IMG/VR virus record: IMGVR_UViG_3300023049_000005
Location: 124,001-188,000 of that record
Strand: one strand, 5' to 3'
Length of the DNA: 64,000 bases
Shown: piece by piece, positions 33,959 to 61,708 of the stretch
Layout of the letters: every line of letters begins with the position of its first letter
Numbering within the stretch: the stretch's first letter is position 1
Notes under the pieces: generated by a model
What the model saw: only the letters and a program-made list of their open reading frames with translations
What the model was told of the DNA's origin: nothing
Databases searched by the model: none
Made by a program: the position numbers and the translations under genes

Positions 33959-34043
33959 GGCTGAGTGGTGGAATTGGTAGACACGTTGGACTTAAAATCC
34001 AATGGGCATTGCGCCCGTGCGGGTTCGACTCCCGCCTCAGCTA
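33959..34043 (+). tRNA. tRNA-Leu (TAA)
   Basis: GGCTGAG/CTCAGCT acceptor, TTGGA-CT TAA AA-TCCAA, long variable arm, GGTTCGA T-loop; no encoded CCA. Confidence 0.95.
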
Positions 34044-34048
34044 CAAAT

Positions 34049-34801: not shown

Positions 34802-34990
34802 ATGAAATTTGAATTAGATAAACATCAGTTAAAAGAAATTGATCAATGGAAACAAAAGATCAAAGAGAAACACGGTAAATATGGTCATTTCGATTATATT
34901 TTTACACCCTTTGGTGCAGGAACAGGTGTTAAAATTTATAGCCACTTAGAGAAAGAATATCTAGATGTAAGTGATACACAAGATTGGTAA
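34802..34990 (+). CDS. Hypothetical small protein
   Basis: MKFELD...YIFTPFGAG...LDVSDTQDW. Confidence 0.65.
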   Translation: MKFELDKHQLKEIDQWKQKIKEKHGKYGHFDYIFTPFGAGTGVKIYSHLEKEYLDVSDTQDW

Positions 34991-34991
34991 T

Positions 34992-36275
34992 ATGTATAAA
35001 GGCGAAGATAAATATATTTTGGTAATGTTGCCCTATCCTAGTGGTAGTGGATTACATGTTGGTCATTCCTATTGTTATGCTTTAATGGATAGTTACTGCA
35101 GATGGAAAAGGTATATGGGGGAATCTGTGTTCCAACCATTTGGTTATGATAGTTTTGGGTTGCCTGCTGAATTATATGCTGACAAAGTAGGTAGAGATCC
35201 AAAAGAAGTCACACAAGAAAACATAGAGAACTTTAGGAAACAGATGGATCATATGAATACCATGTTTGAGGAAAAATTGATCACATCCGATCCTTCTTAT
35301 CAAAAATGGAGTCAGTTCATATTCGATGTCATGAAAAAAAGTGGATTGGCTTATAAAAAATTTGGGGAAACTAGTTATTGTCCAAGTTGTAAAACTACAT
35401 TGGCGAATGCTCAAATAATAGATGATTATTGTGAACGTTGTTCCTCTAAAATAGAACAGACTGAATCAGAACAATGGTACTTTAAAATCACTGATTATAT
35501 CGATAGATTGGAAAAGAACTTAGATGAAATTGATTACCCATCTAAGACCATTAAGCAACAAAGACATTGGTTGCAGAATATGAGAGAGAATAATATCGAT
35601 TGGTGTGTTTCTAGACAAAGGAAATGGGGCTGTCCTATTCCGATTGAGGGGGAAGAAGATACCTTGGATACATTTGTTGATAGTAGTTTCTACTTCATTA
35701 GATATTGTGATCCTGATAATACAGAAGAAATTTGTAGTAAAGAAAACTTTAAACAAGTTGATTTATGTATAGGTGGTAACGAACATGCTTGCGCACATTT
35801 GGTATATGCTAGATTCATGATGATGGTATTATATGATAATGGTTATGTACCTGTTGAAGAACCCTTTAAGAAAGTTGTCCATAATGGGATGATTACTAAG
35901 GATGGTTATAAGATGTCTAAATCTAAAGGTAATGTTGTTGATCCAAATGATTATGACCCAAATGAATTGAGAATGTACTTGATGTTTATCGGTCCTTACA
36001 CACAGGGTGGTGATTGGGAAGATAGCAAGATCAAAGGCATCAGAAGGTTTATTGGTAGATGGGATAGATGGATGGAAACTGCCGAAGAAAACGGAGAAGG
36101 ATTAAATGATATTAATGAATTGGAAGAAACTATTGATGATTATATGAATAGTTGGAAATTCAATAAAGTTATTTCCTCATTGATGGAATACTATAATAAG
36201 AACAAGAACAATACTATTAGTACTGATAGTAAAGAGAAGTTGAATAAGATATATAATTGTTTTAAAACAAAGTAA
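34992..36275 (+). CDS. leuS: Minimal leucyl-tRNA synthetase (no CP1 editing domain)
   Basis: MLPYPSGSGLHVGH (HIGH), GYDSFGLPAE, Zn knuckle, QWYFKITDY, DWCVSRQRKWGCPIP, DTLDTFVDSS, GGNEHA..HL.YARF, KMSKS; about 427 aa from ATG 34992. Confidence 0.9.
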   Translation: MYKGEDKYILVMLPYPSGSGLHVGHSYCYALMDSYCRWKRYMGESVFQPFGYDSFGLPAELYADKVGRDPKEVTQENIENFRKQMDHMNTMFEEKLITSDPSYQKWSQFIFDVMKKSGLAYKKFGETSYCPSCKTTLANAQIIDDYCERCSSKIEQTESEQWYFKITDYIDRLEKNLDEIDYPSKTIKQQRHWLQNMRENNIDWCVSRQRKWGCPIPIEGEEDTLDTFVDSSFYFIRYCDPDNTEEICSKENFKQVDLCIGGNEHACAHLVYARFMMMVLYDNGYVPVEEPFKKVVHNGMITKDGYKMSKSKGNVVDPNDYDPNELRMYLMFIGPYTQGGDWEDSKIKGIRRFIGRWDRWMETAEENGEGLNDINELEETIDDYMNSWKFNKVISSLMEYYNKNKNNTISTDSKEKLNKIYNCFKTK

Positions 36276-36276
36276 T

Positions 36277-37206
36277 ATGAAAGAATATATTTTCGAAAAA
36301 GGGAAAAGGGTATATAAGTTAACCGATGAGGGTATCTTATATAATAAACTTAAAGTTAATCCGATAAAGAGAATAAATCGCTTCAAGAAAGTAAAGATAC
36401 CGAAGGTGAATCCTCATCAAATTGTTATCGGTGGTGGATCTTATAACAGGAAAGTGTTTTATTATGAATTATACCACGACACCAAATTAAAAGAAGGTGA
36501 AACAGTTAGATTCAAAAACAAAATAGGAGATTACTCTAAGTCTAACCTTTTACTTAAAATGATATCAGAAAATGATCCTCCTTATTTTAGAAATATAGAT
36601 AAAAAAATATACCACTATAACTACAAGAATATTTTAATAGGAATATATGACAGTCAATATAAAGCTAGTCTTGGAACAGGTATAAACCAATCTTGTATTT
36701 CACAACGTCTACGAGGTAAAATAAATACATCTAGGTTTGTGGATTATTCATATATGGTATATGATGGCGACGAATTATTAGACAGATATAGTGATTATAA
36801 CCAATCGGGCATAAACACTGTTGTCCAAATGGACTTAGATGGTAACGTGTTGAATAAATTTGGCAATGCAAAGGATGCCGCAGACATTTTCGAGTTAGGA
36901 ACGTGTGCAGAATCACATATTGTGAAATGTTGTAGGAAAAAGAGAGAAAAGGCTTATGGGTATAGGTGGTCATATTCTTGCGATTACAGAAAGAGAATGA
37001 AGAAAATGGTAGTTAAGTATAACAAAGATGGAGATCCTATTGCTATTTATAAGAATAGACAAGATGCTGTCAAGAATATGCCTATACTCAAATCATATTT
37101 ATCTTTAGTAATAAACGGTAAAATCAACCCTAAAAAATTTAGCATCAAAGAAGTTAGTTATGATGCGGGATTAAGTATAAGAAACAAATTGGTTGAGGAA
37201 GTTTAA
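36277..37206 (+). CDS. NUMOD1/IENR1-repeat protein, degenerate HNH homing-endonuclease-like
   Basis: Three 'V.QY..DG..I..F.S..DA' type repeats; HNH-like region lacks the His/Asn residues. Confidence 0.6.
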   Translation: MKEYIFEKGKRVYKLTDEGILYNKLKVNPIKRINRFKKVKIPKVNPHQIVIGGGSYNRKVFYYELYHDTKLKEGETVRFKNKIGDYSKSNLLLKMISENDPPYFRNIDKKIYHYNYKNILIGIYDSQYKASLGTGINQSCISQRLRGKINTSRFVDYSYMVYDGDELLDRYSDYNQSGINTVVQMDLDGNVLNKFGNAKDAADIFELGTCAESHIVKCCRKKREKAYGYRWSYSCDYRKRMKKMVVKYNKDGDPIAIYKNRQDAVKNMPILKSYLSLVINGKINPKKFSIKEVSYDAGLSIRNKLVEEV

Positions 37207-38112: not shown

Positions 38113-38168
38113 AGTAATTTTACACTAAGAAATTTTTAAAACCCAACTTCAAAAGAGTTGGGTTTTTT
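38086..38168 (+). promoter_or_regulatory. Transcription attenuator of the tRNA cluster
   Basis: gttgggt 38086-92 (+aaaattt 38094-100) pairs with acccaac 38141-47 (+aaatttt 38130-36), competing with terminator aaaacccaactt 38138-49 / gagttgggtttt 38155-66 plus T-run. Confidence 0.8.
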
Positions 38169-38180
38169 GTTTTTATATAT

Positions 38181-38252
38181 GGACTGTTAGCTCAGAGACA
38201 GAGCAGATGGCTGTTAACCATCAGGTCGGGATCTCGGAATTCCCACAGTCCT
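38181..38252 (+). tRNA. tRNA-Asn (GTT), atypical T-arm
   Basis: GGACTGT/ACAGTCC acceptor; GATGG-CT GTT AA-CCATC; T-loop CTCGGAA; U discriminator. Confidence 0.75.
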
Positions 38253-38260
38253 CAAAATAT

Positions 38261-38334
38261 TCCTCAGTAGCTCAGTTGGTTAGAGCGTCTGACTGTTAAT
38301 CAGAATGTCGTTGGTTCGAATCCAACCTGAGGAG
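38261..38334 (+). tRNA. tRNA-Asn (GTT), canonical
   Basis: TCCTCAG/CTGAGGA, TCTGA-CT GTT AA-TCAGA, G73. Confidence 0.95.
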
Positions 38335-38344
38335 CTAGATATTT

Positions 38345-38426
38345 GCCTTCGTGGTGGAATTGATAGACACGCTAGATTTAGAATCTAGTTCCGTGAGGAG
38401 TGCAGGTTCAAGTCCTGTCGGGGGTA
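38345..38426 (+). tRNA. tRNA-Leu (TAG)
   Basis: CTAGA-TT TAG AA-TCTAG, variable arm. Confidence 0.92.
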
Positions 38427-38433
38427 CAAATAT

Positions 38434-38520
38434 TCTTGGGTTGCCGTAGTGGTCGAACGGTCCTGACTGTTAATCAGGTGAGTTAATACTCCATCGTAGG
38501 TTCAAATCCTACCCCAAGAG
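38434..38520 (+). tRNA. tRNA-Asn (GTT) with long variable arm
   Basis: TCTTGGG/CCCAAGA, CCTGA-CT GTT AA-TCAGG, 17-nt variable region. Confidence 0.85.
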
Positions 38521-38523
38521 CAT

Positions 38524-38607
38524 AGAGAAGTGGTGAAATGGGTAAACACAGGAGGATCAAAACCTCTCGCCTTTAGGGGCTTGCGAGTTCGAGTCTCGCC
38601 TTCTCTA
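38524..38607 (+). tRNA. tRNA-Leu (CAA)
   Basis: AGAGAAG/CTTCTCT, GGAGG-AT CAA AA-CCTCT. Confidence 0.88.
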
Positions 38608-38612
38608 CATAT

Positions 38613-38693
38613 TGGTAGGTACTCAGCCCATCCTGATAAGATGGAGAACTGTAATTGGTGTTGAAAATGTGGGTTCAAATCCCACTCTACCAA
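38613..38693 (+). tRNA. D-arm-less tRNA-Ile (GAT)-like RNA
   Basis: TGGTAGG/TCTACCA acceptor, 8-nt D-replacement loop, CCATC-CT GAT AA-GATGG, 24-nt variable region, GTGGG-TTCAAAT-CCCAC. Confidence 0.65.
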
Positions 38694-38698
38694 CATAT

Positions 38699-38773
38699 AG
38701 TCTAGTAGCTCAGTTGGTTTAGAGCGCAACGCTGATACCGTTGAGGTCGTAGGTTCAAGTCCTACCTAGACTA
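38699..38773 (+). tRNA. tRNA-Ile (GAT)
   Basis: AGTCTAG/CTAGACT, CAACG-CT GAT AC-CGTTG. Confidence 0.92.
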
Positions 38774-38783
38774 CAGATAAAAT

Positions 38784-38868
38784 GCTAATGTCGCATAGTT
38801 GGTCGATTGCACTCCCCTTGTAAGGGAGAACTGAAAAGACATCGGGGGTTCGAATCCCTCCATTAGCT
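38784..38868 (+). tRNA. tRNA-Thr (TGT) with extended variable region
   Basis: GCTAATG/CATTAGC, CTCCC-CT TGT AA-GGGAG. Confidence 0.85.
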
Positions 38869-38876
38869 CAAAATAT

Positions 38877-38950
38877 AGCCTATTAGCTCAGGGGTTCAGA
38901 GCGTCTGTTTTACACGCAGAAAGTCGGTGGTTCGAATCCACCATAGGCTA
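38877..38950 (+). tRNA. tRNA-Val (TAC)
   Basis: AGCCTAT/ATAGGCT, TCTGT-TT TAC AC-GCAGA. Confidence 0.92.
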
Positions 38951-39057
38951 CTAATGGGGTAGGCACTTAAACGAGTACCTAAAAATAAAGCACCTATGGT
39001 GTGTTCGTTTAAGTTTGATAGGAATGTGGTGTTTGTCGTTCCTTGATAAGAAACTAT

Positions 39058-39131
39058 GCCGATGTAGCTCAGTTGGTCAGAGCAGTTGATTTGTAATCAA
39101 CGGGTCGGGGGTTCGAATCCCTCCATCGGCT
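39058..39131 (+). tRNA. tRNA-Thr (TGT), canonical
   Basis: GCCGATG/CATCGGC, GTTGA-TT TGT AA-TCAAC. Confidence 0.95.
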
Positions 39132-39139
39132 CAAATTAT

Positions 39140-39223
39140 ATCCCTATGGTGTAATTGGTGACATCCTTGTTTTACATGCAAGAGACGTGAAGTATAATCT
39201 TGGTTCGAGTCCAAGTAGGGATA
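39140..39223 (+). tRNA. tRNA-Val (TAC) with extended variable region
   Basis: ATCCCTA/TAGGGAT, CTTGT-TT TAC AT-GCAAG, 16-nt variable region. Confidence 0.82.
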
Positions 39224-39230
39224 CAAATAA

Positions 39231-39370
39231 GTGTGTGGTCTATATACCTTAATATGATCTAGATAGTATTAAGAAGAATTGGTTAGACAAAAACTGTGAA
39301 AAGTTATGTATATAGTCTAGGATAGATATATGAATTTAACAGGGCGTGAGTTCGATTCTCACCACATGCT
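39231..39370 (+). ncRNA. tRNA-like RNA (acceptor stem + T-arm, large non-tRNA core)
   Basis: GTGTGTG/CACATGC acceptor with G3:U70, GTGAG-TTCGATT-CTCAC T-arm, internal stems ctatatac/gtatatag and cttaatat/gtattaag. Confidence 0.55.
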
Positions 39371-39377
39371 CAAATAT

Positions 39378-39451
39378 TGCGAGGTAGCTTAGTGGTCTAA
39401 AGCACTTGAGTCATAACCAAGAGATCGAGGGTTCGAATCCCTCTCTCGCAA
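39378..39451 (+). tRNA. tRNA-Met (CAT)
   Basis: TGCGAGG/TCTCGCA, CAT anticodon, A.C mismatch closing the anticodon stem. Confidence 0.82.
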
Positions 39452-39464
39452 CTATATAGTATAT

Positions 39465-39550
39465 GTCGGTGTGACCTGAGTGGCGAAGGGTGTGGACTGC
39501 AAATCCATAGAACGAAAGTTCCATCGTAGGTTCGAGTCCTACCACCGACT
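39465..39550 (+). tRNA. tRNA-Cys (GCA) with long variable arm
   Basis: GTCGGTG/CACCGAC, GTGGA-CT GCA AA-TCCAT, gaac-gaaa-gttc variable stem, U73. Confidence 0.88.
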
Positions 39551-39620
39551 CTAAGTAGTATTATAGTACATTAAGTTATTTTTACTATATTTGTAAAAAT
39601 AAACCAACAAAACTTTCATT

Positions 39621-41058: not shown

Positions 41059-44000
41059 ATGACTCAAAGTGGGATGATAAAGGGGAAACAGATTAATATT
41101 GAAAGTATTAATTTAATACCAAACGAAAGCCCTTTAGCTTTAACTTCTTTTACCGTATCTACGGCATCTACGACATTTAGTGGAAAACAGATTATCAATT
41201 TAGAGTATTTAAACGATCAATTAGATTTAAAGATTGATATTACTCAAATAAACGATAATGCTACTTCTTCTACTTCTTCGTTATGGAGTGCTGATAAGAT
41301 ATATACTGAGATAACAGGATTAAGTCAATCAATCGATTCTGTTAGTATAAGTATATCAAATATACTGAATGATTTTATCACGGGATCTACTACAGGGTGG
41401 AGTTCTGAGAAAATTGATGAAGAATTAATTACATTAGAGAATAGTGTTAATATTAAAATTGATTCAGTAAGCATAAGTGTTGCTAATTTACTAAATGATT
41501 CAATCACAGGATCAACAACGGGTTGGTCTTCTGAGAAGATTAATAATGAGCTTGATTTAAAACTCGATGACAGCCAATTAAATGATGCAGCAGCCACGTC
41601 ATCTACTACATCATTGTGGAGTGTGAATAAGATATATACTGAATTACAAGCCATCGAAGCTAATGATTTACAAATAAATGACAATGCTACAAGTTCTACA
41701 ACTTCATTATGGAGTGCTAATAAGATATACACAGAGATACAAGGACTAAGTTCATCTGTTGATGCTAGAATTGATATAATAAATATCAGTGTATCTAATA
41801 TTGAAGGTGATATCATAGGTCTAAGTAATTCAATTGATAGTTTAAGTGTAAGTGTAGCCGATAACACAGCTAACATCGATTCTGTTAGTATAAGTGTTGC
41901 TAATATCTTAAACGATGGTATCACAGGATCTACAACAGGGTGGAGTTCTGAGAAAATAAACAACGAGTTAGATCTTAAATTAGATGATAGTCAGCTAAAT
42001 GATAGTATAATAGGTACTCTTTCTTTATGGAGTAGTGATAAGATAAGCAGTGAAATACAAGGGTTAAGTTCTTCTGTAAATACTAGAATAGACACCGTAA
42101 GCGCAAGTGTGATCGGTTTAAGTCAATCGGTTGATTCTCTAAGTCAAAGTGTAGCTACTAATACTACAAACATCGATTCAGTTAGTATCAGTGTAGCCAA
42201 CCTACTTAATGATAGTATCACAGGTTCAATAACAGGATGGAGTTCTGAGAAAATTGATGAAGAATTAATTACATTAGAGAATAATATTAATAGTCAATTA
42301 GATCTTAAATTAGATGACAGTCAGTTAAATGATACTATAGTGGGTACTGATTCTTTATGGAGTAGTGATAAGATAGATAGTGAGATACAAGGATTAAGTT
42401 CCTCTGTTAACACTAGAATAGATACCGTAAGTGCTAGTGTCATTGGATTAAGTCAATCAGTTGATTCGATAAGTATCAGTGTTACTAACAATACTAGTAC
42501 TATTACGGGATTAAGTCAATCTATTGATGTGATAAATGTTACTATTTCTAATATAGAAGGTGATATTACAGGATTAAGTCAGTCAATTGACTCAGTAAGT
42601 ATTAGTGTAGCTAACCTTCTTAATGACTCAATAACAGGTTCTACAACAGGTTGGAGTTCTGAGAAAATTGATGAAGAATTAATTACATTAGAGAATAATA
42701 TCAATAGTCAATTAGATCTTAAATTAGATGTTAGTCAATTAAATGATGCGGCTGCAACAAGCTCAACTACTTCATTGTGGAGTGTGAATAAGATTTATAC
42801 TGAATTACAAGCTATTGAAGCTAATGATCTACAAATAAATGATGCTGTTACTGCAACAGATAGTGTTTGGAGTTCTAATAAGATAGACAACGAACTAGAT
42901 CTTAAAGTAGACAAAACACAAATAGACGATGGTGGTACAGGTACTACATCGTTGTGGAGTGTGGATAGACTGTTGACTGAATTCGAATTAAAACTAGATG
43001 TTAGTCAATTAAATGATAGTATTATATCAGCAACGGGTCTATGGAGTAGTGATAAGATAAGCAGTGAAATACAAGGATTAAGTTCTTCTGTAAATACTAG
43101 AATAGACACCGTAAGTGCAAGTGTGATCGGTTTAAGTCAATCAGTAGATTCATTAAGTCAAAGTGTTGCTACTAATACTACAAACATCGATTCAGTTAGT
43201 ATCAGTGTAGCTAATATACTTAATGATAGTGTTACAGGTTCAACAACAGGATGGTCATCAAATAAGATAGATAGTGAGTTAGATTTTAAATTAGACGACA
43301 CACAATTAAACGATGTTGTTATAGGAACAAACTCATTATGGAGTTCTGATAAAATTAACAGTGAGGTACAAGGTTTGAGTTCTTCTGTGTATGCTGAAAT
43401 AGATTCTGTAAGTATAAGTGTCGCCAATCTATTAAACGATAGTATCACAGGATCAACAACAGGTTGGACATCACAAAAAATTGATAGCGAATTAGATCTT
43501 AAGCTAGATGTTAGTCAATTAAATGATGCGGCTGCAACAAGTTCTACTACCTCTCTTTGGAGTGTGAATAAAATTTACAACGAATTACAAGCTATTGATG
43601 CAGACCATCTACAAATAAATGACAATGCTACAAGCTCTACAACTTCTGTTTGGAGTGGTAATAAAGTTTATACTGAAATACAAGGATTAAGTTCTTCTGT
43701 ATATGCCGAAATAGATTCTGTTAGTATTAGTGTGTCTAATCTTCTTAATGATAACATTACGGGATCAACAACGGGTTGGTCTTCTGAGAAAATTGATGAA
43801 GAATTAATTACATTAGAGAATAATATTAATATTAAAATTGATTCAGTAAGCATAAGTGTTGCTAATTTACTAAATGACAGTATTACGGGATCAACAACAG
43901 GTTGGTCTTCTGAGAAGATTAATAGTGAACTTGATTTAAAACTAGATGATAGTCAATTAAATGATGTTGCTGCAACAAGCTCTACTACATCACTATGGAG

Positions 44001-47000
44001 CGTTAATAAAATTTATACTGAATTACAAGCTATTGATGCTGATCATCTACAAATAAACGATAATGTAACAAGCTCTACTACATCAGTATGGAGTGGTAAT
44101 AAAGTTTACACAGAGATACAAGGATTAAGTTCTTCTGTTAACACTAGAATTGATACAGTGAGCGCAAGTGTTATAGGATTAAGCCAATCAGTAGATTCAT
44201 TAAGTGTGAGTGTTTTTAATAACACCACTACTATAACAGGATTAAGTCAGTCAATTGATTCAGTAAGTATTAGTGTAGCTAATTTATTGAACGATTCAAT
44301 TACAGGATCTACTACAGGATGGTCTTCACAAAAGATAAACGATGAACTTGATCTTAAACTAGATGATAGTCAGTTAAATGATAGTGCTGCTACTAGTTCT
44401 ACTACTTCTTTGTGGAGCGTGAACAAGATCTATAATGAATTAGAATTAAAGCTTGATGATAGCCAAATCAATGACGCTGCTACTAGTTCTACTACCTCAT
44501 TATGGAGTAGTGATAAACTATATACTGAATTCGAAAACAAACTTGATACAAGTTTAACTAATAGTTACATTTTCTTAGGGTCACCACAAAATGTAGCAAC
44601 TCCTACCGAAACTGAAAAAATTTATATAAGCAGTGTTAGTGATGTACCATTAACAGAAGAATACTTATTCTTAAATGGGAACACAGTTACATTAGCTCAG
44701 AAAATAGAAAGTAATTTCCAAATTGCCGAAAGAACACAACAAGGTTGGATGGTTAGTAAAAGAAATGTCAATGAAGAAGTTATATTTGATATAGACGTAT
44801 CTTCTGCTTCTCTATTTAATACTGCATCAAACGAACTAGATATAAGTAATTACACAGGGGTTGATTCCTTAAATATCATAGATAGTACAACATCATCTCC
44901 TATATCAATAACTATATCTTCAATATCAGGTCTAGAAAGTGGTTATAATATAAACTTACGTTTAGAAGGACAGGGATCTATAACATTTGAAAACACATCT
45001 GCAACAGCAGCTAGTGTGGGGGATTTAATTTTATTTAATGATGAGAATAGAACGATAGTGGGTGGAACATATTCACAGGGTATAAATATTAAGAATAAAA
45101 ATGGTGTCAATTTAGAAATAGACCCACAATTTGATATTATAATAGACCAAGTAAATAGTAATATCAACGATAGTACAACATCGTCTACTACATCAGTATG
45201 GAGTGCTAACAAGATTTACACAGAATTACGAGCTATTGATGCTGATCATCTACAAATAAACGATAATGCAACAAGCTCTACTACATCAGTATGGAGTGGT
45301 AATAAAGTTTACACAGAGATACAAGGATTAAGTCAATCGATAGACAGTGTGAGTATTAGTGTAGCTAATATCTTAAATGATAGCATTACAGGATCTACTA
45401 CGGGATGGAGTTCACAAAAGATAAATAATGAACTCGACCTAAAACTAGACGACACTCAGTTAAATGATAGTATAATAGGTACTGATTCTTTATGGAGCAG
45501 TGATAAAATAAATAGTGAAGTGCAAGGTTTGAGTTCTTCTGTGAATTCTAGAATAGATACTGTAAGTGCTAGTGTAATAGATAACACAAACACTATAATA
45601 GGTCTAAGTAGCTCTGTTGATTCTTTAAGCCTGAGTGTATTTAATAACACAACCGATATTACAGGATTAAGCAATTCAATAGACATTATTAATGTTACTA
45701 TCTCAAATATAGAAGGTGATATTATAGGACTGAGCAATTCTATCGATAGTGTTAGTATTAGTGTGTCTAACTTATTAAATGATAGTATAACTGGTTCAAC
45801 AACAGGTTGGACTTCACAAAAGATTAACAATGAGTTAGATCTTAAATTGGATGATAGTCAATTAAACGATGCTGCTGCTACAAGTAGTACTACATCATTA
45901 TGGAGTGTGAATAAGATATATACTGAATTACAAGCCATTGATGCTAACGATCTTCAAATAAATGATAATATAACAGCTACGGATAGTGTTTGGAGTTCTA
46001 ATAAGATAGATAGCGAAATACAAGGATTAAGCTCATCTGTAAATACTAGAATAGACACAGTGAGCGCAAGTGTGATTGGTTTATCCCAATCAGTAGATTC
46101 ATTAAGTGTGAGTGTATTTAATAACACTACTGATATTACAGGATTAAGTCAATCTATTGATTCTGTTAGTATAAGTGTTGCTAATATCTTAAACGATGGT
46201 ATCACAGGATCTACAACAGGGTGGAGTTCTAATAAGATAGACAGTGAACTTGATCTTAAACTAGATGTTAGTCAATTAAATGATAGTATAATAGGTACTC
46301 TTTCTTTATGGAGTTCAGATAAGACTAACACAGAGATACAGGGGTTAAGTTCTTCTGTAAATACTAGAATAGACACCGTAAGCGCAAGTGTGATCGGTTT
46401 AAGCCAATCAGTAGATTCATTAAGTCAAAGTGTTGCTACTAATACTACAAACATCGATTCAGTAAGCATAAGTGTAGCTAATATCTTAAATGATAGCATC
46501 ACAGGTTCTACTACGGGATGGAGTTCTGAAAAGATAGATAACGAACTTGATCTTAAACTTGATGATAGTCAATTAAATGATGCTGCTGCGACGAGCAGTA
46601 CAACTTCGCTATGGAGTGTGAATAAGATTTATACCGAGCTACAAACTATTGATGCTGATCATTTACAAATAAATGATAACGCAACAAGCTCTACTACATC
46701 AGTATGGAGTGGCAACAAAGTTTATACAGAGATACAGGGATTAAGCTCATCGGTATACGCTGAGATTGATTCAGTAAGCATAAGTGTATCTAATCTTCTT
46801 AATGATAGTATTATAGGTTCAACAACAGGATGGACTTCACAGAAGATAAGTGATGAACTTGATCTTAAACTAGACGACACTCAAATCAATGACACGGCTA
46901 CTAGTTCAACTACTTCTTTATGGAGTAGTGATAAATTATATACAGAATTCCAAGGTAAATTGGGTACAGGATTAACCGAGAGTTATATATTCTTAGGTTC

Positions 47001-50000
47001 TGTGGGAAATATAGCTACTGAAACACCAACTGAAAAAATATATCCGATAAACGACAACGATGTTCTATTGACCGAAAGCTATTTGGCTCAATTTAGAAGT
47101 GATTTAAGTATCGGTCAAAAAGTAGAAACGGTTAATCAAATAGCCGAGAAGACTCCAAATGGTTGGTCAATTATAAAGAAAAACATTAACGAAGACTTAA
47201 TATATGATATTGATATATCTAATTCTAGTAATTATACTATTTCTTCAAATGAATTAAATATAAGTGATTACTTAGGTGTAGACACTTTAAATATTATAGA
47301 TGGTTCAACATCATCACCATTTTCTATAACAGTATCAACTATTGCAGGACTTTATGCTGATTTCAAAATTAGGTTTACTGTGGACACGGGTGGGGAAGTT
47401 ACTTTTGAACACACTGACTTGGCTACTGCGTCTTTTGATGATATAGTATTATCAAGTGGGGTAAATAAAACTATCACAGGAAGTACTTATAGTGATTATT
47501 TATCTATACAAAAAATAGATATAATAAATAAAGAAACGGATTTATCTTCTGATAGTATAACAAGTAATATAACAAATAATATTAGTAATAGTATCAATGA
47601 TGGTACTACTAGTTCTACTACATCACTTTGGAGTGCTAATAAGATATATACTGAATTACAAGCTATTGATGCTGATCATTTACAAATAATCGACAGTGTT
47701 ACTAGCTCTACTACTTCTGTTTGGAGTGGTAACAAAGTCTACACAGAGATACAAGGATTGAGTTCATCTATATTTGCTGAAATAGATTCAGTAAGTATTA
47801 GTGTGTCTAATCTTCTTAACGATAGTATTACGGGTTCTACAACAGGGTGGACATCACAAAAGATAAGCAATGAACTTGACCTTAAACTAGATGATACTCA
47901 AATCAATGACACAGCTACTAGTTCTACTACATCATTATGGAGTAGTAATAAATTATATACAGAATTTGAAAATAAATTAGATACAGGATTAACAGAAAGT
48001 TATATTTTCCTTGGTAATACAGCCAATGAATCAAGCAGAGTTCCAACATCTAAATTATACATAGATAACGTTAGTACAGATATACTAACAGAGACTTATG
48101 TGTCCAATAATTATTCCACTGCTTCAATAGGACAAAAGGTTGAGGCTAGTGACCAAATAGCAGAAAAGACACAAACCGATTGGATGATATCTAAGAAGAA
48201 TCACAACCAAGACATAGTTAAAGATCTAGATATATCTTCTGCTTCTTTATTTGCTACTTCTTCTAATCAAATGAACATTACACAATTCATTGGTGTGGAC
48301 ACTATAAACATAATTGATAGTAGCACTTCTTCTTTTTCTGCTACAATATCTACTATATTTGGATTGTTTGATAGATCTAGTGTTAAATTTAAAGTCACAA
48401 CAGGCGGTAGCGTAACATTTGAACATACAGACATAGCCTCTGCTTCTTTTTATGATATTAGCTTACTTAGTGGAGGAAATGTTACAATAATTGGAAGCAC
48501 ATATAGTGAGTTTTTAAGGTTACAAAAAATTAATAATATTAACATCGAAGAAGATAATGTGTCTTTAGGTGTCGGATCAGTAACTATAAATGATAGTTCT
48601 ACTAGTTCTACAACAGAAACATGGAGTGCCGATAAGATATACACAGAGATAACAGGTATATCTGCCTCTTTAAGCTCGGAGATAAACGATTCGATAACAG
48701 CAACAGATAGTACGTGGAGTAGTGATAAGATACAGACAGAAATAGATGATTCTAGTTTATATACATCAAACGGTACAATATCTTCTCCTAGGACAATATA
48801 TGGTAACGAAACACAATTAATATTAGATGGTGGTCAATTTGAGATTTGGGAAGGAATCGATACAACCGAGTATGGTGTTATTTTAAGAGAAAGTGGTGGT
48901 GGTATTAGAGGACAATTTGTATATGATGCGCTATCTAATACAACTAAACTCGAATTATTAAACGGAACAAGTAGTTTCTTCTTAGCTAATGGTGGAACTG
49001 TTAGTGTTAAAGGTGCATTCACTATTGATGATGACGATAATTCACATTATTTACAATTCTCAGCAGGATCGTTAACACAAAGTTTAACTTATGTTTTCCC
49101 TTCAGATTATGGAACGGATGGTCAAGCACTTATAACAGATGGTTCGGGAACATTAGATTGGATTACGGTTGCTACTAATTCACTTAGTATAAATGATAGT
49201 TCTACTAACTCTACTACTGAGGTATGGAGCGCAGATAAGACATATACAGAGATACAAGGTTTGAGTTCTTCTGTGTTTGGTGAAATTGATTCTGTTAGTA
49301 TTAGTGTATCTAATCTCCTTAATGATAGTATTACAGGTTCAACAACAGGTTGGACATCTCAAAAAATTAATAACGAACTAGATCTTAAACTAGATGATAC
49401 TCAGTTAAATGATGCGGCTGCTACTAGTTCTACTACATCTTTATGGAGTGTGAATAAGATTTATACAGAATTAGAATTAAAACTTGATGATAGTCAATTA
49501 AATGATGCTGTTACTGCAACAGATAGTGTTTGGAGTTCTAATAAGATAGACAACGAACTAGATCTTAAAGTAGACAAAACACAAATAGACGATGGTGGTA
49601 CAGGTACTACATCGTTGTGGAGTGTGGATAGACTGTTGACTGAATTCGAATTAAAACTAGATGTTAGTCAATTAAATGATAGTATTATATCAGCAACGGG
49701 TCTATGGAGTAGTGATAAGATAGATAACGAACTAGATCTTAAACTAGATGATACTCAGTTAAATGATGCGGCTGCTACTAGTTCTACTACTTCATTGTGG
49801 AGTGTGAATAAGATTTATACAGAACTAGATTTAAAACTAGACGATAGTCAGTTAAATGATACAATAACAACGACTAATTCATTATGGTCTTCAGACAAAA
49901 TAGATACCGAGTTAGACCTTAAGTTAGACGATACTCAGATTAATGATTCTGCTACAAATGTAAATATTTTATGGTCTTCTGATAAAATAGATACCGAGTT

Positions 50001-58509: not shown

Positions 58510-58898
58510 TCTACATCAGCTTCTTTTAACCACATATCTAAATTATTAGCTAAATTATCAATAGTTGTTTCTACATATAGATTATAAAATTCTGTGCTTA
58601 GATCTTCATCAAAACAAGAAGGACATTTGTAGTCATAATCCGCAGCATAGGATTGACTCACCATTAGATTAAAGTCCTTATCATAAACATATACCACAGT
58701 AGTATCGAAAGAAATACCGTAGGAAACATCATTCCTACGGTATAATCGATCAGTGTCATTATAATCAGGTCTATGTACGTCTGCGTTTTCAACGTACCCA
58801 CAACCTAACTTATCGAATTTAGAGAAGATATTGGCTTCTATCCAATTGATCTTTTCCATATAATTAAACACATCTTCTCTTTTATTAACTATATTCAT
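58482..58898 (-). CDS. Hypothetical protein
   Basis: 138-aa ORF. Confidence 0.6.
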   Translation of the reverse strand: MNIVNKREDVFNYMEKINWIEANIFSKFDKLGCGYVENADVHRPDYNDTDRLYRRNDVSYGISFDTTVVYVYDKDFNLMVSQSYAADYDYKCPSCFDEDLSTEFYNLYVETTIDNLANNLDMWLKEADVDYTSSEPSS

Positions 58899-60087
58899 AC
58901 TTCTCGTAATTATATCCTCTCTTATCTAACCACTTTCTAGCGATTTCTAAATAATTTGTTTGTTTAGAAATCACATCTATAGCAGAATCAAAAGGATCTC
59001 TGTTATAGTTATACTTCGCCATAACAGCAGGGAAATACATGTTCTTATGATACTTTAATGCAAAAGACTTAACATCCCCCATTTCTAGAATATTATATAA
59101 ACTGTTGGTGTTATTAACGATTTCATTTAACTCAGTTCTTACTATATTTAAGATAGTGTTTATTCTATCAATAGTAATAGTTTCGTCCTTAGGTATCTCT
59201 CCTAACAAATCATCGATAGTACCATCAAGAATATACTTAATGATCATATTCTCACGTCTGATTTCATCTGTTAATAAACCATGACGAGATCTATACCATT
59301 CGTTCTTTATTTTGTAGAAGAAGTCATGTCCATTATCATCAATAGCATGGATAACATATCCCTCTTTGTTTTCGTCTGTTTCATTGATTTCTAACAAACG
59401 ATCCAAAGATTCGATATCTTCGAAATTGGCATACTCGATATTATTTTCATTTAGGATATCTAAATAATCATGTATATCTAAATACTTACCTGTCTTATTA
59501 TCCCTTAATTTCAATAAGATAAGTTTCTCTTCTTTATAGTTCAAAACTATCCTATTCCTTGGGGAAACATATTCAAATACTGCTACAATATTATTGTCTA
59601 AACAATAGTCAACAAAGTTTCTTACGCCTTCGTTTTTTTCATATAGTTTAGTAGTACCAATAGCCTGTGGGGAATCAAATCCCATCTTGGATTTCCCAAT
59701 TACTTTACCATTAGGTAGTCTAATAAAAGATGCTACAGAACCATCCTCTTTATTGTTGATGTATTTTATTTTGAGATGCTTTACATTTTCATATAAAGAT
59801 TCAGTAGTTTGGTTCAAGTTAAAGAATTTCTCTAACAATAAAAATCTATTATATAAAGTACCATCTTTATTGAAAACAAAACACAACCCTCTTAACTCTC
59901 TAGCATCATGACCTTCTATTCCCAAAGGGTTAAGAAAGTCCATATACTGAGCTAAACGATAATTGAATAAAGAAACGTTATAACCTTCGATCACATATTT
60001 ATTTTCATAAAATGTATTCTTTTCAAAGCTATTACATATCTTCACACATTCATCGTAAGATGGTAAATATGTTCTGTGAGTTTTCAT
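58885..60087 (-). CDS. RNA ligase 1 (T4 Rnl1/RnlA family)
   Basis: 'RELRGLCF', 'EKFFNLN', motif I KEDGS, FEYVSP.NRIV, EGYV, YKIKNEWY. Confidence 0.9.
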   Translation of the reverse strand: MKTHRTYLPSYDECVKICNSFEKNTFYENKYVIEGYNVSLFNYRLAQYMDFLNPLGIEGHDARELRGLCFVFNKDGTLYNRFLLLEKFFNLNQTTESLYENVKHLKIKYINNKEDGSVASFIRLPNGKVIGKSKMGFDSPQAIGTTKLYEKNEGVRNFVDYCLDNNIVAVFEYVSPRNRIVLNYKEEKLILLKLRDNKTGKYLDIHDYLDILNENNIEYANFEDIESLDRLLEINETDENKEGYVIHAIDDNGHDFFYKIKNEWYRSRHGLLTDEIRRENMIIKYILDGTIDDLLGEIPKDETITIDRINTILNIVRTELNEIVNNTNSLYNILEMGDVKSFALKYHKNMYFPAVMAKYNYNRDPFDSAIDVISKQTNYLEIARKWLDKRGYNYEKYEYS

Positions 60088-60108: not shown

Positions 60109-60840
60109 TTACCATTTTCCTAATTCTTTTTCAACGTTATTATCATATAATATCTCACCTGTTTTTACCCAATGATTCCAATTATCTCGTAAACCATCAT
60201 GTTTATAGTGTAGAACAGAACCATTATTTCTTTCGATATAAGACATTATAGATTCTGCATAAATACTAAAATGATTATATGTGTTATCTCCACAACCACA
60301 TGCAGTAGAAGAACCATTATTAAATTCCCATGTAAGTGGTATCAGATCACATTTTGGACAAGGTAGCCAAATATGGGGGGTTTTAACAGCTTTATACGAA
60401 TCGATACAATTATAATTCTTTCTTAGTGATTTGATTTTTTCTTGTTTCTTTGCTTCTTTATTCTTCTTTTTGATATTCCTAAAGTATTCTATTAATCTTG
60501 GATCAGTAATACCACCTTTCCCGTTATTAAAATCCACTTCACCTTCCATCATTTTGATGAAAGCCTTAGGGGATAAGTGATGTAACTTATATGTACTTAT
60601 TGAAGACATATTTTCTATTTCATTCTTTATTTGATAAGAAACATTTTGTCTGAAATAAGCATACTTTAAATCAGTAGTAGTTAAAAGGGTTTTTCTATCC
60701 ATTAAGAATCTATTCTCTTCCTTTTCTTCGCCTAATATGTCATCAATAACATTGTTTCTTTCCTTGACTTTATCAGTTATTTCGACGTAATAATAGTCTC
60801 TATCACCTAATAATTTATATTCAGATAAATTTATTTTCAT
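60109..60840 (-). CDS. Hypothetical protein with C-terminal Cys-rich domain
   Basis: WLPCPKC...ACGC; N-part has RNNVIDDIL motif. Confidence 0.65.
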   Translation of the reverse strand: MKINLSEYKLLGDRDYYYVEITDKVKERNNVIDDILGEEKEENRFLMDRKTLLTTTDLKYAYFRQNVSYQIKNEIENMSSISTYKLHHLSPKAFIKMMEGEVDFNNGKGGITDPRLIEYFRNIKKKNKEAKKQEKIKSLRKNYNCIDSYKAVKTPHIWLPCPKCDLIPLTWEFNNGSSTACGCGDNTYNHFSIYAESIMSYIERNNGSVLHYKHDGLRDNWNHWVKTGEILYDNNVEKELGKW

Positions 60841-60876: not shown

Positions 60877-61374
60877 ATGGCAAATGAGAAAAAATTAGTA
60901 TGGTCTACTGAGAATGTTAAGGAAGCTGAACAAAAATTAGACGAAGGTATAATACTTAAAGGTTATGAAATACCGTTTTTTGATAAAATCCCAGGTCTGA
61001 AGAAGTCGAATCTAGCATTTAAAGTAACAGAAGAAGAACTTAATGAATACATGAAATGTAAAGTAGATATCAGATACTTTATAGCTAATTACTGTTATAT
61101 TAAGTCAGAGGATGGTGATTATCATTTAATGAAGCTAAGAGATTATCAACATGATGTAATTGACTTATATGATAAGAATCCATTGAGTATACTTATGGCA
61201 TCGAGACAAATTGGTAAGTGTGTTGATCCATTAACAGAAGTTAAAATCATCGATAAGACTGATAACAATTATATTATGCCTTTTTTTAGATTATTATATA
61301 AATCTAAAGTATCTAAAACAATATATGATCACATAAAATATGTGTTATATTCATTATTATATAAACTATCTTAG
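60877..61374 (+). CDS. Terminase large subunit N-fragment fused to a split-intein N-part
   Basis: gp17-like 'EYMKC...YFI.NYCYI...LRDYQ...SRQIGK' then intein block A 'CVDPLTEVKI' from 61219; stop after 51 aa. Confidence 0.8.
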   Translation: MANEKKLVWSTENVKEAEQKLDEGIILKGYEIPFFDKIPGLKKSNLAFKVTEEELNEYMKCKVDIRYFIANYCYIKSEDGDYHLMKLRDYQHDVIDLYDKNPLSILMASRQIGKCVDPLTEVKIIDKTDNNYIMPFFRLLYKSKVSKTIYDHIKYVLYSLLYKLS

Positions 61375-61669: not shown

Positions 61670-61708
61670 ATGTATTAAACAATTTCATTACTTTCTAATA
61701 TATTGTAC

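What the first reader, a model, noticed from the sequence alone, without database searches (positions are those of the whole stretch)
38181..39550. Canonical and structurally aberrant tRNAs paired for the same anticodon
Seen: Asn(GUU) occurs as a canonical copy, a long-variable-arm copy and a copy with odd T-loop and U73. Thr(UGU), Val(UAC) and Ile(GAU) each have one canonical and one enlarged or aberrant copy. Cys(GCA) has a class-II-like variable stem capped by GAAA. Known: long variable arms are normally restricted to Leu/Ser/Tyr/Sec. Inference: the variants could resist host tRNases, act as decoys, or have altered charging identity.
Basis: partly seen in the sequence, partly recalled or inferred. 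Interest (0 to 1): 0.65.

Follow-up and report, generated by a model that had tools for sequence, protein, structure and literature searches.

The report
Phage tRNAs with swapped body plans
A 271-kb lake-water phage carries ordinary tRNAs next to same-anticodon copies built on unusual scaffolds; these odd copies are conserved in many uncultured phages, not found in the bacterial genomes searched, and look like working tRNAs that may escape tRNA-cutting host defences.

Summary
Window 38181-39551 holds 14 tRNA-like genes. Canonical Asn, Ile, Thr and Val tRNAs sit beside same-anticodon copies with a long variable arm, an odd T arm, or no D arm. Cys(GCA) exists only as a long-arm copy.

These are not decaying pseudogenes. 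Each aberrant type belongs to a family found in many other viral contigs, with compensatory changes in every stem, including the extra variable-arm helix. The families were not found in the bacterial genomes searched, apart from phage-like tRNA arrays in MAGs and one unexamined pattern hit. The canonical copies are up to 92% identical to Flavobacteriales tRNAs.

Across 1942 distinct phage tRNAs, the discriminator base of long-arm variants follows the anticodon in 153 of 163 cases. Body-plan swaps appear mainly where the cognate synthetase is known or expected to tolerate them: short Leu is common, short Ser and Tyr almost absent, and long Arg and Ala absent. I therefore read them as cognately charged isoacceptors, not as Ser/Leu-charged missense tRNAs.

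Why the shape changed is inferred. The most likely reason is escape from tRNA-targeting nucleases. The set includes Lys(UUU), Thr(UGU) and Asn(GUU), the known PARIS targets, and the window also encodes a T4 Rnl1-like RNA ligase. No expression data exist.

The parts
38181..38253 (+). tRNA-Asn(GUU) of the 'odd T-arm' type. It has a 7-nt D loop (AGAGACA), T arm GGGAT-CTCGGAA-TTCCC with U53.U61, and U73.
   Evidence: Rfam 46.8 bits; missed by ARAGORN. A cloverleaf is the minimum-energy fold. An ortholog in huge phage LR756501 shows compensatory changes. The family has at least 119 viral loci and 89 distinct tRNAs.
38261..38335 (+). Canonical tRNA-Asn(GUU), G73, host-like.
   Evidence: Rfam 75.6 bits. 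Up to 92% identical to tRNAs in Flavobacteriales genomes.
38345..38427 (+). tRNA-Leu(UAG), ordinary class II.
38434..38521 (+). Class-II-bodied tRNA-Asn(GUU). It has a 7-bp acceptor stem, one extra connector nucleotide, a Ser-like D arm (CCGT-AGTGGTCGA-ACGG), a variable arm GAGT-TAAT-ACTC followed by CATC, and G73.
   Evidence: ARAGORN. CM R1 scores 103.5 bits. The 31-member alignment A5 has 97.5% paired cells, and all 4 variable-stem pairs covary. A strain variant in lake metagenomes carries compensatory changes.
38524..38608 (+). tRNA-Leu(CAA), ordinary class II.
38612..38694 (+). D-armless Ile(GAU) tRNA-like RNA. It has an 8-bp acceptor stem, an anticodon arm extended by 3 bp, about 17 unpaired nt containing GG, a 5-bp T stem, and C73.
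   Evidence: Rfam only 16.8 bits. The consensus fold of 4 orthologs has 10 pairs with changes on both sides, including the 8th acceptor pair and the CAG/CTG to CGA/TCG switch. There are 14 distinct members, all with GAU or UAU anticodons.
38699..38774 (+). Canonical tRNA-Ile(GAU).
   Evidence: Rfam 72 bits.
38784..38869 (+). Long tRNA-Thr(UGU). Its variable region is 14 nt, A/C-rich and mostly unpaired, its D loop is class-II-like (AGTTGGTCGA), its T arm is identical to the canonical copy, and it has U73.
   Evidence: 56.7 bits. 20 distinct long Thr in other phage arrays, all U73.
38877..38951 (+). Canonical tRNA-Val(UAC).
   Evidence: Rfam 67.8 bits.
39058..39132 (+). Canonical tRNA-Thr(UGU), host-like.
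   Evidence: Rfam 74.8 bits. Up to 92% identical to Flavobacteriales tRNA-Thr.
39140..39224 (+). Long tRNA-Val(UAC). It has a Leu-like D arm (TG-GTGT-AATTGGTG-ACAT), a 16-nt variable region AGACGTGAAGTATAAT that is conserved in sequence, and A73.
   Evidence: 50.8 bits. 17 tRNA hits of the variable-region pattern in viral contigs, all anticodon UAC and A73, with differing but complementary stems.
39465..39551 (+). Class-II-bodied tRNA-Cys(GCA). It shares the scaffold of the long Asn and Lys copies, has variable arm GAAC-GAAA-GTTC and U73, and is the only Cys tRNA of the genome.
   Evidence: R1 scores 76.7 bits. 11 long Cys in other arrays, 10 with U73.
39378..39452 (+). tRNA with CAU anticodon (Met or Ile2 type), canonical length, part of the array.
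33959..34044 (+). tRNA-Leu(UAA), class II, upstream of the LeuRS-like gene.
34971..36275 (+). Truncated leucyl-tRNA synthetase-like protein (434 aa). The HIGH (HVGH) and KMSKS motifs are present. The CP1 editing domain and the C-terminal tRNA-binding part are absent.
   Evidence: NCBIfam leuS_bact scores 363 bits, below the 548 cut-off. The best PDB match is 3ziu, a 637-residue LeuRS chain, which I recall as the CP1-lacking Mycoplasma mobile enzyme. Homologs of 422 and 508 aa lie next to tRNA arrays in two huge phages.
36277..37206 (+). HNH-type homing-endonuclease-like ORF between the LeuRS-like gene and the tRNA array.
   Evidence: phrog_20162, E 3.7e-7. Context only.
58885..60087 (-). T4 Rnl1-like RNA ligase (400 aa). 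In T4 this enzyme reseals tRNA cut by an anticodon nuclease.
   Evidence: TIGR02308 E 2.4e-41; phrog_562 E 6.9e-57; PDB 2c5u/5tt6 E about 1e-30.

Best explanation
The array combines host-like canonical tRNAs with phage-specific isoacceptors that keep the same anticodon and the same synthetase identity marks but are rebuilt on other scaffolds. The scaffolds are: a Ser-like class II body (Asn and Cys here; Lys elsewhere in the genome), a Leu-like class II body with a fixed variable-region sequence (Val), an enlarged variable loop (Thr), a compact-elbow T arm (Asn U73; His elsewhere), and a D-armless 8/5 form (Ile). Shown: these are conserved, structured phage tRNA families. Inferred from sequence statistics: except perhaps the Ile-like RNA, host cognate synthetases charge them with the amino acid of their anticodon and they decode in translation. 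Inferred by analogy only: the changed shape beside the anticodon stem and elbow makes them poor substrates for host or rival-phage tRNA-targeting nucleases, so phage translation of its A/U-rich codons continues when canonical tRNAs are cut. The Rnl1-like ligase would be a second, repair-based answer to the same pressure.
For: Conservation and structure:
- The D-arm pattern of the long Asn/Lys scaffold gives 35 viral loci, every hit inside an 83-91 nt tRNA.
- Alignment A5 has 97.5% paired cells against 75% in shuffles. 19 of 25 pairs change on both sides, and all 4 variable-stem pairs covary.
- The Val-long, odd-T-arm and Ile-like families also recur with covarying stems.

Phage restriction:
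- Of 62 pattern hits in 185,579 species genomes, only 3 lie in tRNAs, and all 3 are in phage-like arrays.
- CM R1 scores 77-104 bits on the phage copies but at most 58.6 bits in 151 Flavobacteriales genomes.
- BLAST of the array against 61 Flavobacteriales genomes lists hits only to canonical Asn, Thr and Val and to Leu(UAG).

Cognate identity:
- In 1942 distinct phage tRNAs, the discriminator of long variants equals that of canonical tRNAs of the same isotype in 153 of 163 cases: Thr U 20/20, Cys U 10/11, Gly U 4/4, His C 2/2, Trp G 7/7, Lys A 17/17, Asn G 30/33.
- Odd-T-arm His copies have G-1 and C73 in 12 of 12.
- Swaps follow known or expected synthetase tolerance: short Leu 64/161, short Ser 2/92, short Tyr 0/69, long Arg 0/147, long Ala 0/61.
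- The long copy is often the only copy of that anticodon in its locus. It is the only Asn tRNA found in the tRNA region of cultured Cellulophaga phage phi4:1.
- No class IIb synthetase is encoded in the genome, so host enzymes must do the charging.

Defence context:
- PARIS AriB cuts Lys(UUU), Thr(UGU) and Asn(GUU) in the anticodon stem (PMC12409363).
- T5 tRNA-Tyr resists retron-Eco7 through a distinctive variable loop (quoted in PMC13096335).
- An Rnl1-like ligase is encoded in the window.
Against: - There is no expression, processing, charging or cleavage data; no RNA run holds this phage.
- The host and its defence systems are unknown.
- The long Asn keeps the UAAUCA sequence that AriB recognises in E. 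coli, so any protection would have to come from shape, not sequence.
- Class IIb synthetases (Asn, Lys, Asp) approach tRNA from the variable-loop side (textbook knowledge), so a long arm might hinder them.
- The odd Asn has U73 instead of G73. The Ile-like RNA has C73 and no D arm, which fits poorly with cognate charging.
- The loci used for the statistics were fetched with patterns from the window's own variants, so the frequencies are biased for Asn, Lys and Val.
Confidence: 0.45

Rival explanations
1. Neutral by-product of tRNA gene birth. New isoacceptors arise in phage arrays by duplicating a class II tRNA (Ser, Tyr or Leu) and changing the anticodon and discriminator. The long arm is kept only because removing it would break the fold, so the shape brings no benefit.
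For: - The Asn, Lys and Cys long copies share one scaffold, so anticodon shifts did occur.
- The scaffold's D arm is close to native Bacteroidota tRNA-Ser.
- The same variable arm appears on Asn and Thr copies of one phage, L027.
- A Val-long scaffold carries a CAU anticodon in L164.
- tRNA fragments lie next to the arrays.
Against: - The same swap recurs for at least 15 isotypes and also in the opposite direction (short Leu).
- The families persist across phages whose stems have diverged at nearly every position.
- Variants are kept beside, or instead of, host-like canonical copies that would do the same decoding job.
Confidence: 0.25
2. Missense tRNAs. The class II bodies are charged by SerRS, LeuRS or TyrRS, or by the phage's editing-less mini-LeuRS. 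All of these ignore or tolerate the anticodon, so Ser or Leu would be inserted at Asn, Lys, Thr, Val and Cys codons.
For: - The D arm is Ser-like with G20b and C11:G24, and the Asn copy has G73.
- The long Val has a Leu-like D arm, an A15:U48-type pair and A73.
- A truncated LeuRS-like gene lies 2 kb upstream.
- Precedents: allo-tRNAs (PMC5389517) and, from my own knowledge, nematode nev-tRNAs.
Against: - The discriminator tracks the anticodon, not the body: U73 for Thr, Cys and Gly, C73 for His, A73 for Lys on the same Ser-like scaffold.
- G2:C71, which I recall as a main E. coli SerRS determinant, is not conserved: GC 9, AU 8, CG 8, UA 4.
- The variable stem is 4 bp with 4 unpaired 3' nucleotides, against 5 bp and 2 in the native Bacteroidota Ser example parsed.
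- Long Arg and Ala variants are absent, which would not be expected if cognate synthetases were irrelevant.
Confidence: 0.1
3. Non-translating decoys or regulators. The aberrant copies bind and soak up a nuclease, toxin or modification enzyme, or act as processing or regulatory elements, without entering the ribosome.
For: - The Ile-like RNA lacks a D arm and has C73, yet keeps a perfect Ile anticodon loop in 14 distinct members.
- The odd Asn has U73.
- Authors of the PARIS and Septu studies raise decoy or inhibitor roles for phage tRNAs (PMC12409363, PMC13096335).
Against: - For the long-arm and odd-T-arm families, the acceptor stem, discriminator, 7-nt anticodon loop and (in the long-arm family) the T loop are kept as in working tRNAs.
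- They are often the sole phage copy of that anticodon in their locus.
Confidence: 0.15
4. Pseudo-tRNAs: decaying duplicates without function.
For: GenBank annotates the phi4:1 ortholog as 'tRNA-Pseudo'. Rfam scores are lower than for canonical copies.
Against: Conservation with compensatory substitutions in every helix across tens of phages and in lake-water strain variants.
Confidence: 0.03

Closest known systems
Nuclease-resistant phage tRNAs: T5 tRNA-Lys/Thr/Asn against PARIS AriB, and T5 tRNA-Tyr against retron-Eco7/Septu PtuAB (PMC12409363, PMC11464382, PMC11555353, PMC13096335, PMC10264068)
   Same: Phage-encoded copies of the very isoacceptors that defence nucleases cut (Lys UUU, Thr UGU, Asn GUU). 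For T5 tRNA-Tyr, resistance is ascribed to a different variable loop. The copies sit in tRNA arrays next to a homing-endonuclease-like gene.
   Different: The known cases differ from host tRNAs by a few substitutions in the anticodon stem-loop or variable loop. Here whole architectural features are exchanged: class I to class II body, a new T arm, or loss of the D arm. No resistance has been measured.
allo-tRNAs and selC* tRNA-Cys (Mukai et al., PMC5389517)
   Same: Bacterial and phage tRNAs with long variable arms and non-Ser/Leu/Tyr anticodons. selC* tRNA-Cys shows that U73 plus GCA on a long-arm body can be a working tRNA-Cys.
   Different: allo-tRNAs have 8/4 or 9/3 acceptor/T branches, a Sec-like D arm, and mostly G73 or U73 regardless of anticodon (Ser or Ala charging). 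The window's long-arm tRNAs are 7/5 and their discriminator follows the anticodon.
Nematode nev-tRNAs (Hamashima et al.; cited as ref. 8 in PMC5389517; details from my own knowledge)
   Same: Class II bodies carrying Gly or Ile anticodons.
   Different: nev-tRNAs keep Leu identity and are leucylated. The phage variants carry the discriminator of the anticodon's own amino acid.
Type I (short-arm) tRNA-Leu of Streptomyces coelicolor (PMC6614811)
   Same: Shows that a bacterial LeuRS can charge tRNA-Leu without a long arm. This matches the many short Leu tRNAs in the related phage arrays.
   Different: It is a cellular case, a single isotype, and the opposite direction of swap. The window itself has only long Leu tRNAs.
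D-armless mitochondrial tRNAs and 8/5 bacterial tRNA-Sec
   Same: The Ile-like RNA lacks a D arm and has a 13-bp acceptor/T branch.
   Different: It is phage-encoded, has an extended anticodon arm and a 17-nt single strand after it, and whether it is charged is unknown.
T4 Rnl1/Pnk tRNA repair against PrrC (established knowledge)
   Same: The window encodes an Rnl1 homolog.
   Different: No Pnk partner was searched for, and no link to the variant tRNAs is shown.

Membership tests
tRNA (Rfam RF00005) | Covariance-model score at or above the 29-bit gathering threshold | tested here: met
   All variants score 46.8-56.7 bits. The exception is the Ile-like element at 16.8 bits, which fails.
tRNA (functional, translating) | 7-nt anticodon loop with U33 and a purine at 37, a 7-bp acceptor stem, and a T-loop TTCRA | tested here: met
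   Met for long Asn, Thr, Val and Cys. The odd Asn has T loop CTCGGAA. The Ile-like RNA has an 8-bp acceptor stem and no D arm.
tRNA (functional, translating) | Expressed, processed, CCA-tailed and aminoacylated | not testable with these tools
   No RNA run holds the phage.
Bacterial class II tRNA (Leu/Ser/Tyr) | Variable region longer than 10 nt that forms a stem-loop, plus a D loop with 20a/20b insertions | tested here: met
   Long Asn, Cys and Lys: a 4-bp covarying helix and D loop AGTGGTCGA. Long Thr: enlarged loop but no stable stem.
Bacterial class II tRNA (Leu/Ser/Tyr) | Anticodon for Leu, Ser or Tyr | tested here: not met
   The anticodons are GUU, UGU, UAC and GCA, plus UUU elsewhere in the genome.
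tRNA-Ser identity (SerRS substrate) | G73, a conserved G2:C71, and a long variable stem with few unpaired 3' nucleotides (E. coli and T. thermophilus rules, from my own knowledge) | tested here: not met
   The discriminator is G only with the Asn anticodon, A with Lys and U with Cys. Pair 2:71 is GC in 9 of 29. The stem is 4 bp with 4 unpaired nucleotides. Actual charging was not testable.
allo-tRNA | 8/4 or 9/3 acceptor/T-stem branch | tested here: not met
   The long-arm copies are 7/5, since position 8 cannot pair. The Ile-like RNA is 8/5.
Pseudo-tRNA | No purifying selection on structure and no orthologs | tested here: not met
   Covariation in all helices. Orthologs occur in tens of viral contigs.
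Phage anti-defence tRNA | Same anticodon as a tRNA targeted by a defence nuclease | tested here: met
   Lys(UUU), Thr(UGU) and Asn(GUU) are the PARIS targets (PMC12409363).
Phage anti-defence tRNA | Resists cleavage and rescues infection under the defence system | not testable with these tools
   Needs biochemical and plaque assays.
Leucyl-tRNA synthetase (window 34971-36275) | Full-length equivalog score, a CP1 editing domain and a C-terminal tRNA-binding domain | tested here: not met
   363 bits against a 548 cut-off. The protein is 434 aa. Alignment to PDB 3ziu stops at residue 518 of 637. The catalytic HIGH and KMSKS motifs are present.

The most novel reading that the evidence does not exclude
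Large phages systematically re-house anticodons in foreign tRNA architectures: class I anticodons in class II bodies, Leu in class I bodies, a T arm whose positions 54 and 58 covary as a Watson-Crick pair, and a D-armless 8/5 Ile form. The only limit is what each cognate synthetase tolerates. This would be a general 'shape camouflage' against tRNA-targeting immunity. It would also be a natural catalogue of tRNA body plans that bacterial translation accepts, and several of these architectures appear undescribed.
Probability: 0.35. Interest if true: 0.85.

Novelty: new variant of a known kind. Interest (0 to 1): 0.72.

Why it matters
- If these tRNAs work as inferred, bacterial AsnRS, LysRS, ThrRS, ValRS, CysRS and others accept class II bodies. 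This would rest on thousands of natural sequences and is relevant to tRNA identity rules and to engineering orthogonal tRNAs.
- It would widen the known phage answer to tRNA-cleaving immunity from point substitutions to wholesale changes of architecture. It would also predict defence nucleases that read tRNA shape.
- Annotation pipelines currently label such genes 'pseudo' or 'other', as in phi4:1, so phage tRNA repertoires are under-counted.
- Cellulophaga phage phi4:1 is cultured and carries the long-arm Asn as the only Asn tRNA found in its tRNA region, so the question is directly testable.

Tried and rejected
- Close relatives of the phage were not found. Megablast of 24 kb gave only short tRNA hits, and the search for related loci with the LeuRS-like protein gave nothing.
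- No RNA sequencing run holds the array. Laying contigs of four lake-water runs showed almost no diversity apart from one relative's long Asn.
- Spacers 38952-39057 and 39225-39377 are not significantly structured (z -0.57 and -1.70). The second ends in a T-arm and acceptor-like 3' half, and I treat it as a probable tRNA remnant.
- An 8/4 or 9/3 (allo-tRNA) reading of the long-arm copies was rejected by inspection.
- No class IIb synthetase and no Rnl2 were found in the genome. The Rnl2 control rang nowhere, so that result is uninformative.
- The ORF next to the ligase has no PDB match.
- The Bacteroidetes-type -7 promoter word TATATTTG is only weakly enriched (16 against 10.7 expected), so I make no host claim from it. 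The sigma-70 promoter scan was not above chance.
- Literature searches found no description of class-II-bodied Asn or Lys phage tRNAs. That is absence in the searched library only.
Full report
**1. What is there**

The window is bases 124001-188000 of a single 270,756-bp viral contig with 29.8% G+C. It is an IMG/VR record that CheckV rates 89% complete. The same sequence occurs in several lake-water metagenomes.

ARAGORN and Rfam agree on a dense, same-strand tRNA array at 38181-39551, with outliers at 33959 and 39930. A strong terminator at 38138-38166 closes the upstream gene.

- Asn(GUU) occurs three times: canonical, long-arm, and odd T-loop with U73.
- Thr(UGU) and Val(UAC) each have a canonical copy and an 85-86-nt copy.
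- Ile(GAU) has a canonical copy and a badly scoring Ile-like element.
- Cys(GCA) has a GAAA-capped variable stem and is the only Cys tRNA of the genome.

A second array outside the window (C1:73275-73762) repeats the theme, with an 89-nt Lys(UUU) among canonical Lys and Phe genes.

**2. The long Asn, Lys and Cys copies share one scaffold**

The shared scaffold has these features:
- A 7-bp acceptor stem.
- One more connector nucleotide than usual.
- A D arm CCGT-AGTGGYCGA-ACGG.
- A 4-bp variable stem with a tetraloop, followed by four unpaired nucleotides.
- A standard T arm.

The D arm, including the 20a/20b insertion, is close to native Bacteroidota tRNA-Ser. The variable arm, however, is shorter and joined differently.

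The D-arm pattern finds 35 loci in the viral collection. Every hit lies inside an 83-91-nt tRNA: 28 carry Asn(GUU) and 7 carry a Lys anticodon.

In a 31-sequence alignment, 97.5% of cells form standard pairs, against 75% in shuffles. Nineteen of 25 pairs change on both sides, and all four pairs of the extra helix covary. A strain variant in two lake-water runs carries compensatory changes in the anticodon and variable stems.

**3. The other aberrant types are families too**

- **Long Val.** Its 16-nt variable region recurs in 17 tRNA hits. All have anticodon UAC and A73. The acceptor, anticodon and T stems differ between members but stay complementary. Several members even have C33.
- **Odd Asn.** Members share a 7-nt D loop and a U53.U61 mismatch (fixed by the search pattern). 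Positions 54 and 58 covary as a Watson-Crick-type pair (T:A 60, A:T 16, C:G 10, G:C 1, G:G 2). Anticodons are mostly Asn, His, Met and Lys.
- **Ile-like RNA.** It has 14 distinct relatives, all with GAU or UAU anticodons. The consensus fold has an 8-bp acceptor stem, no D arm, and an anticodon arm extended by three covarying pairs.
- **Long Thr.** Twenty distinct long Thr tRNAs occur in the fetched arrays.
- **Gene order.** Arrays in contigs of 84 to 508 kb share part of the window's gene order.

**4. The variants were not found outside phage-like arrays; the canonical copies look host-like**

- The scaffold pattern hits 62 places in 185,579 species genomes, roughly what chance predicts by my own estimate. 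Only three hits lie in tRNAs, and all three are long Lys genes in phage-like arrays on MAG contigs.
- A covariance model of the scaffold scores 103.5, 101.8 and 76.7 bits on the phage's long Asn, Lys and Cys. In 151 Flavobacteriales genomes the best score is 58.6 bits. In a smaller search of three Bacteroidota genomes, the top matches I inspected were native Ser, Tyr and Leu tRNAs.
- The odd-T-arm pattern occurs in 1 of 401 Bacteroidota genomes sampled, and I did not examine that one hit.
- BLAST of the whole array against 61 Flavobacteriales genomes lists matches only to canonical Asn and Thr (up to 92% identity), Leu(UAG) and one Val. No listed match falls on a variant.

**5. What amino acid do they carry?**

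I ran ARAGORN over 231 fetched viral loci (2.0 Mb, 1942 distinct tRNAs). Long versions (80 nt or more) exist for 15 class I isotypes.

Their discriminator equals the majority discriminator of canonical tRNAs of the same isotype in 153 of 163 cases. This includes the informative cases that are neither A nor G: Thr U 20/20, Cys U 10/11, Gly U 4/4 and His C 2/2. Odd-T-arm His copies have G-1 and C73 in 12 of 12.

The pattern of which swaps exist matches what is known about synthetases (established identity rules, from my own knowledge):
- Bacterial LeuRS does not need the long arm (see also PMC6614811), and 64 of 161 Leu tRNAs are short.
- SerRS and bacterial TyrRS do need the long arm, and only 2 of 92 Ser and 0 of 69 Tyr tRNAs are short.
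- ArgRS reads A20 in the D loop, and 0 of 147 Arg tRNAs are long.

The genome encodes no class IIb synthetase. The long variant is frequently the only copy of its anticodon in a locus: 131 cases without a canonical partner against 62 with one, although the loci are truncated. In cultured Cellulophaga phage phi4:1, the 89-nt Asn is the only Asn tRNA in the tRNA region, where GenBank calls it 'tRNA-Pseudo'.

Together these results argue that host cognate synthetases charge these tRNAs and that they decode. This is an inference; nothing was measured. It is weakest for the odd Asn with U73 and for the D-armless Ile-like RNA with C73.

**6. Why change the shape?**

This step rests on analogy.
- Defence nucleases cut tRNAs in or beside the anticodon stem. 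PARIS AriB cuts Lys(UUU), Thr(UGU) and Asn(GUU) between positions 40 and 41 (PMC12409363). A bacterial Schlafen cuts between positions 30 and 31 (PMC13056530).
- Septu and retron-Eco7 cut the variable arm of tRNA-Tyr. T5 tRNA-Tyr is reported to resist retron-Eco7 because of its distinctive variable loop (PMC13096335).
- An extra helix emerging at positions 44-48, or a rebuilt elbow, is a plausible steric block.
- The window also encodes a T4 Rnl1-like RNA ligase (58885-60087, minus strand). Rnl1 is the enzyme class that repairs anticodon-nuclease damage in T4.

Against this reading, the long Asn keeps the UAAUCA motif, the host is unknown, and no cleavage data exist. I give the full explanation 0.45. 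Its first part, that these are conserved working tRNAs with cognate identity, deserves considerably more, and the pseudogene reading is essentially excluded.

**7. Rivals**

- **Neutral remoulding by anticodon shift.** This certainly happened, as the shared scaffolds and shared variable-arm modules show. It does not by itself explain recurrence in at least 15 isotypes, the reverse swap in Leu, or long retention beside host-like copies.
- **Deliberate missense through SerRS, LeuRS or the phage's mini-LeuRS.** The discriminator statistics and the unconserved 2:71 pair contradict it. The long Val, with a Leu-like D arm and A73, remains the most ambiguous case.
- **Decoy or regulatory roles.** These remain open for the Ile-like RNA.

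**8. Comparison with known systems, and novelty**

The nearest known systems are the T5-type nuclease-resistant tRNAs, allo-tRNAs and selC* tRNA-Cys, nematode nev-tRNAs, and the type I tRNA-Leu of Streptomyces. The window's tRNAs differ from each in a defining feature: the scale of the change, a 7/5 rather than 8/4 branch, and a discriminator that follows the anticodon rather than the body.

Six full-text searches found no description of class-II-bodied Asn or Lys tRNAs or of the 54:58-covarying T arm in phages. That is not proof of novelty. I rate the finding a new variant of a known kind (phage-encoded variant tRNAs), with interest 0.72.

Noticed in passing
window 34971-36275 (+); L002:11992-13260; L003:11986-13512: A 434-aa leucyl-tRNA-synthetase-like protein keeps HIGH and KMSKS but lacks the CP1 editing domain and the C-terminal tRNA-binding part. 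Homologs of 422 and 508 aa sit next to tRNA arrays in two huge phages (LR745206, LR756501). In LR756501 the gene follows five Leu tRNAs, two of them short-armed. Its function and tRNA partners are unknown.
   Followed up: partly
window 58885-60087 (-): A T4 Rnl1-like RNA ligase is encoded here. No polynucleotide kinase partner was searched for, and the neighbouring 243-aa ORF (60109-60840) has no PHROG or PDB match.
   Followed up: partly
window 36277-37206 (+): An HNH-type homing-endonuclease-like ORF lies between the LeuRS-like gene and the tRNA array. This recalls SegB beside the T4 and T6 tRNA regions.
   Followed up: no
genome C1 about 72,650-72,730 (outside the window; same as L014:665-735): An unannotated tRNA-His(GUG) of the odd-T-arm type, with G-1 and C73, lies upstream of the Lys/Phe array. 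ARAGORN misses it.
   Followed up: partly
genome C1:73763-73800 (outside the window): A 3' fragment of a tRNA (T arm plus acceptor 3' strand) directly follows Lys(CUU). It is a remnant of array rearrangement.
   Followed up: no
window 39225-39377: A 153-nt spacer ends in a T-arm and acceptor-like 3' half (GGGCGTGAGTTCGATTCTCAC...), with a complementary 5' strand about 140 nt upstream. The fold is not significant (z -1.7). It may be a disrupted tRNA.
   Followed up: partly
L105-L165 (for example L117, L120, L153, L155, L142): Several members of the long Val(UAC) family have C33 instead of the universal U33 in the anticodon loop.
   Followed up: no
L003:11012-11164, L006, L012, L022, L027, L028, L031, L032, L037: Short (74-78 nt) tRNAs with Leu anticodons and A73 are common in phage arrays (64 of 161 Leu tRNAs). 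The window's own genome has none.
   Followed up: partly
window 41059-52905 (+): A single open reading frame of 3948 aa lies just downstream of the array. It was not analysed.
   Followed up: no
genome C1:105540-105913 (-), outside the window: ARAGORN calls a tmRNA here with an implausible tag peptide. It was not checked with Rfam and is probably a false call.
   Followed up: no
window 60877-61374 (+) and 61703-63397 (+): A 165-aa ORF matches only part of a terminase large subunit (phrog_5989). The next ORF is an SbcC-like nuclease subunit. The terminase gene may be split.
   Followed up: no
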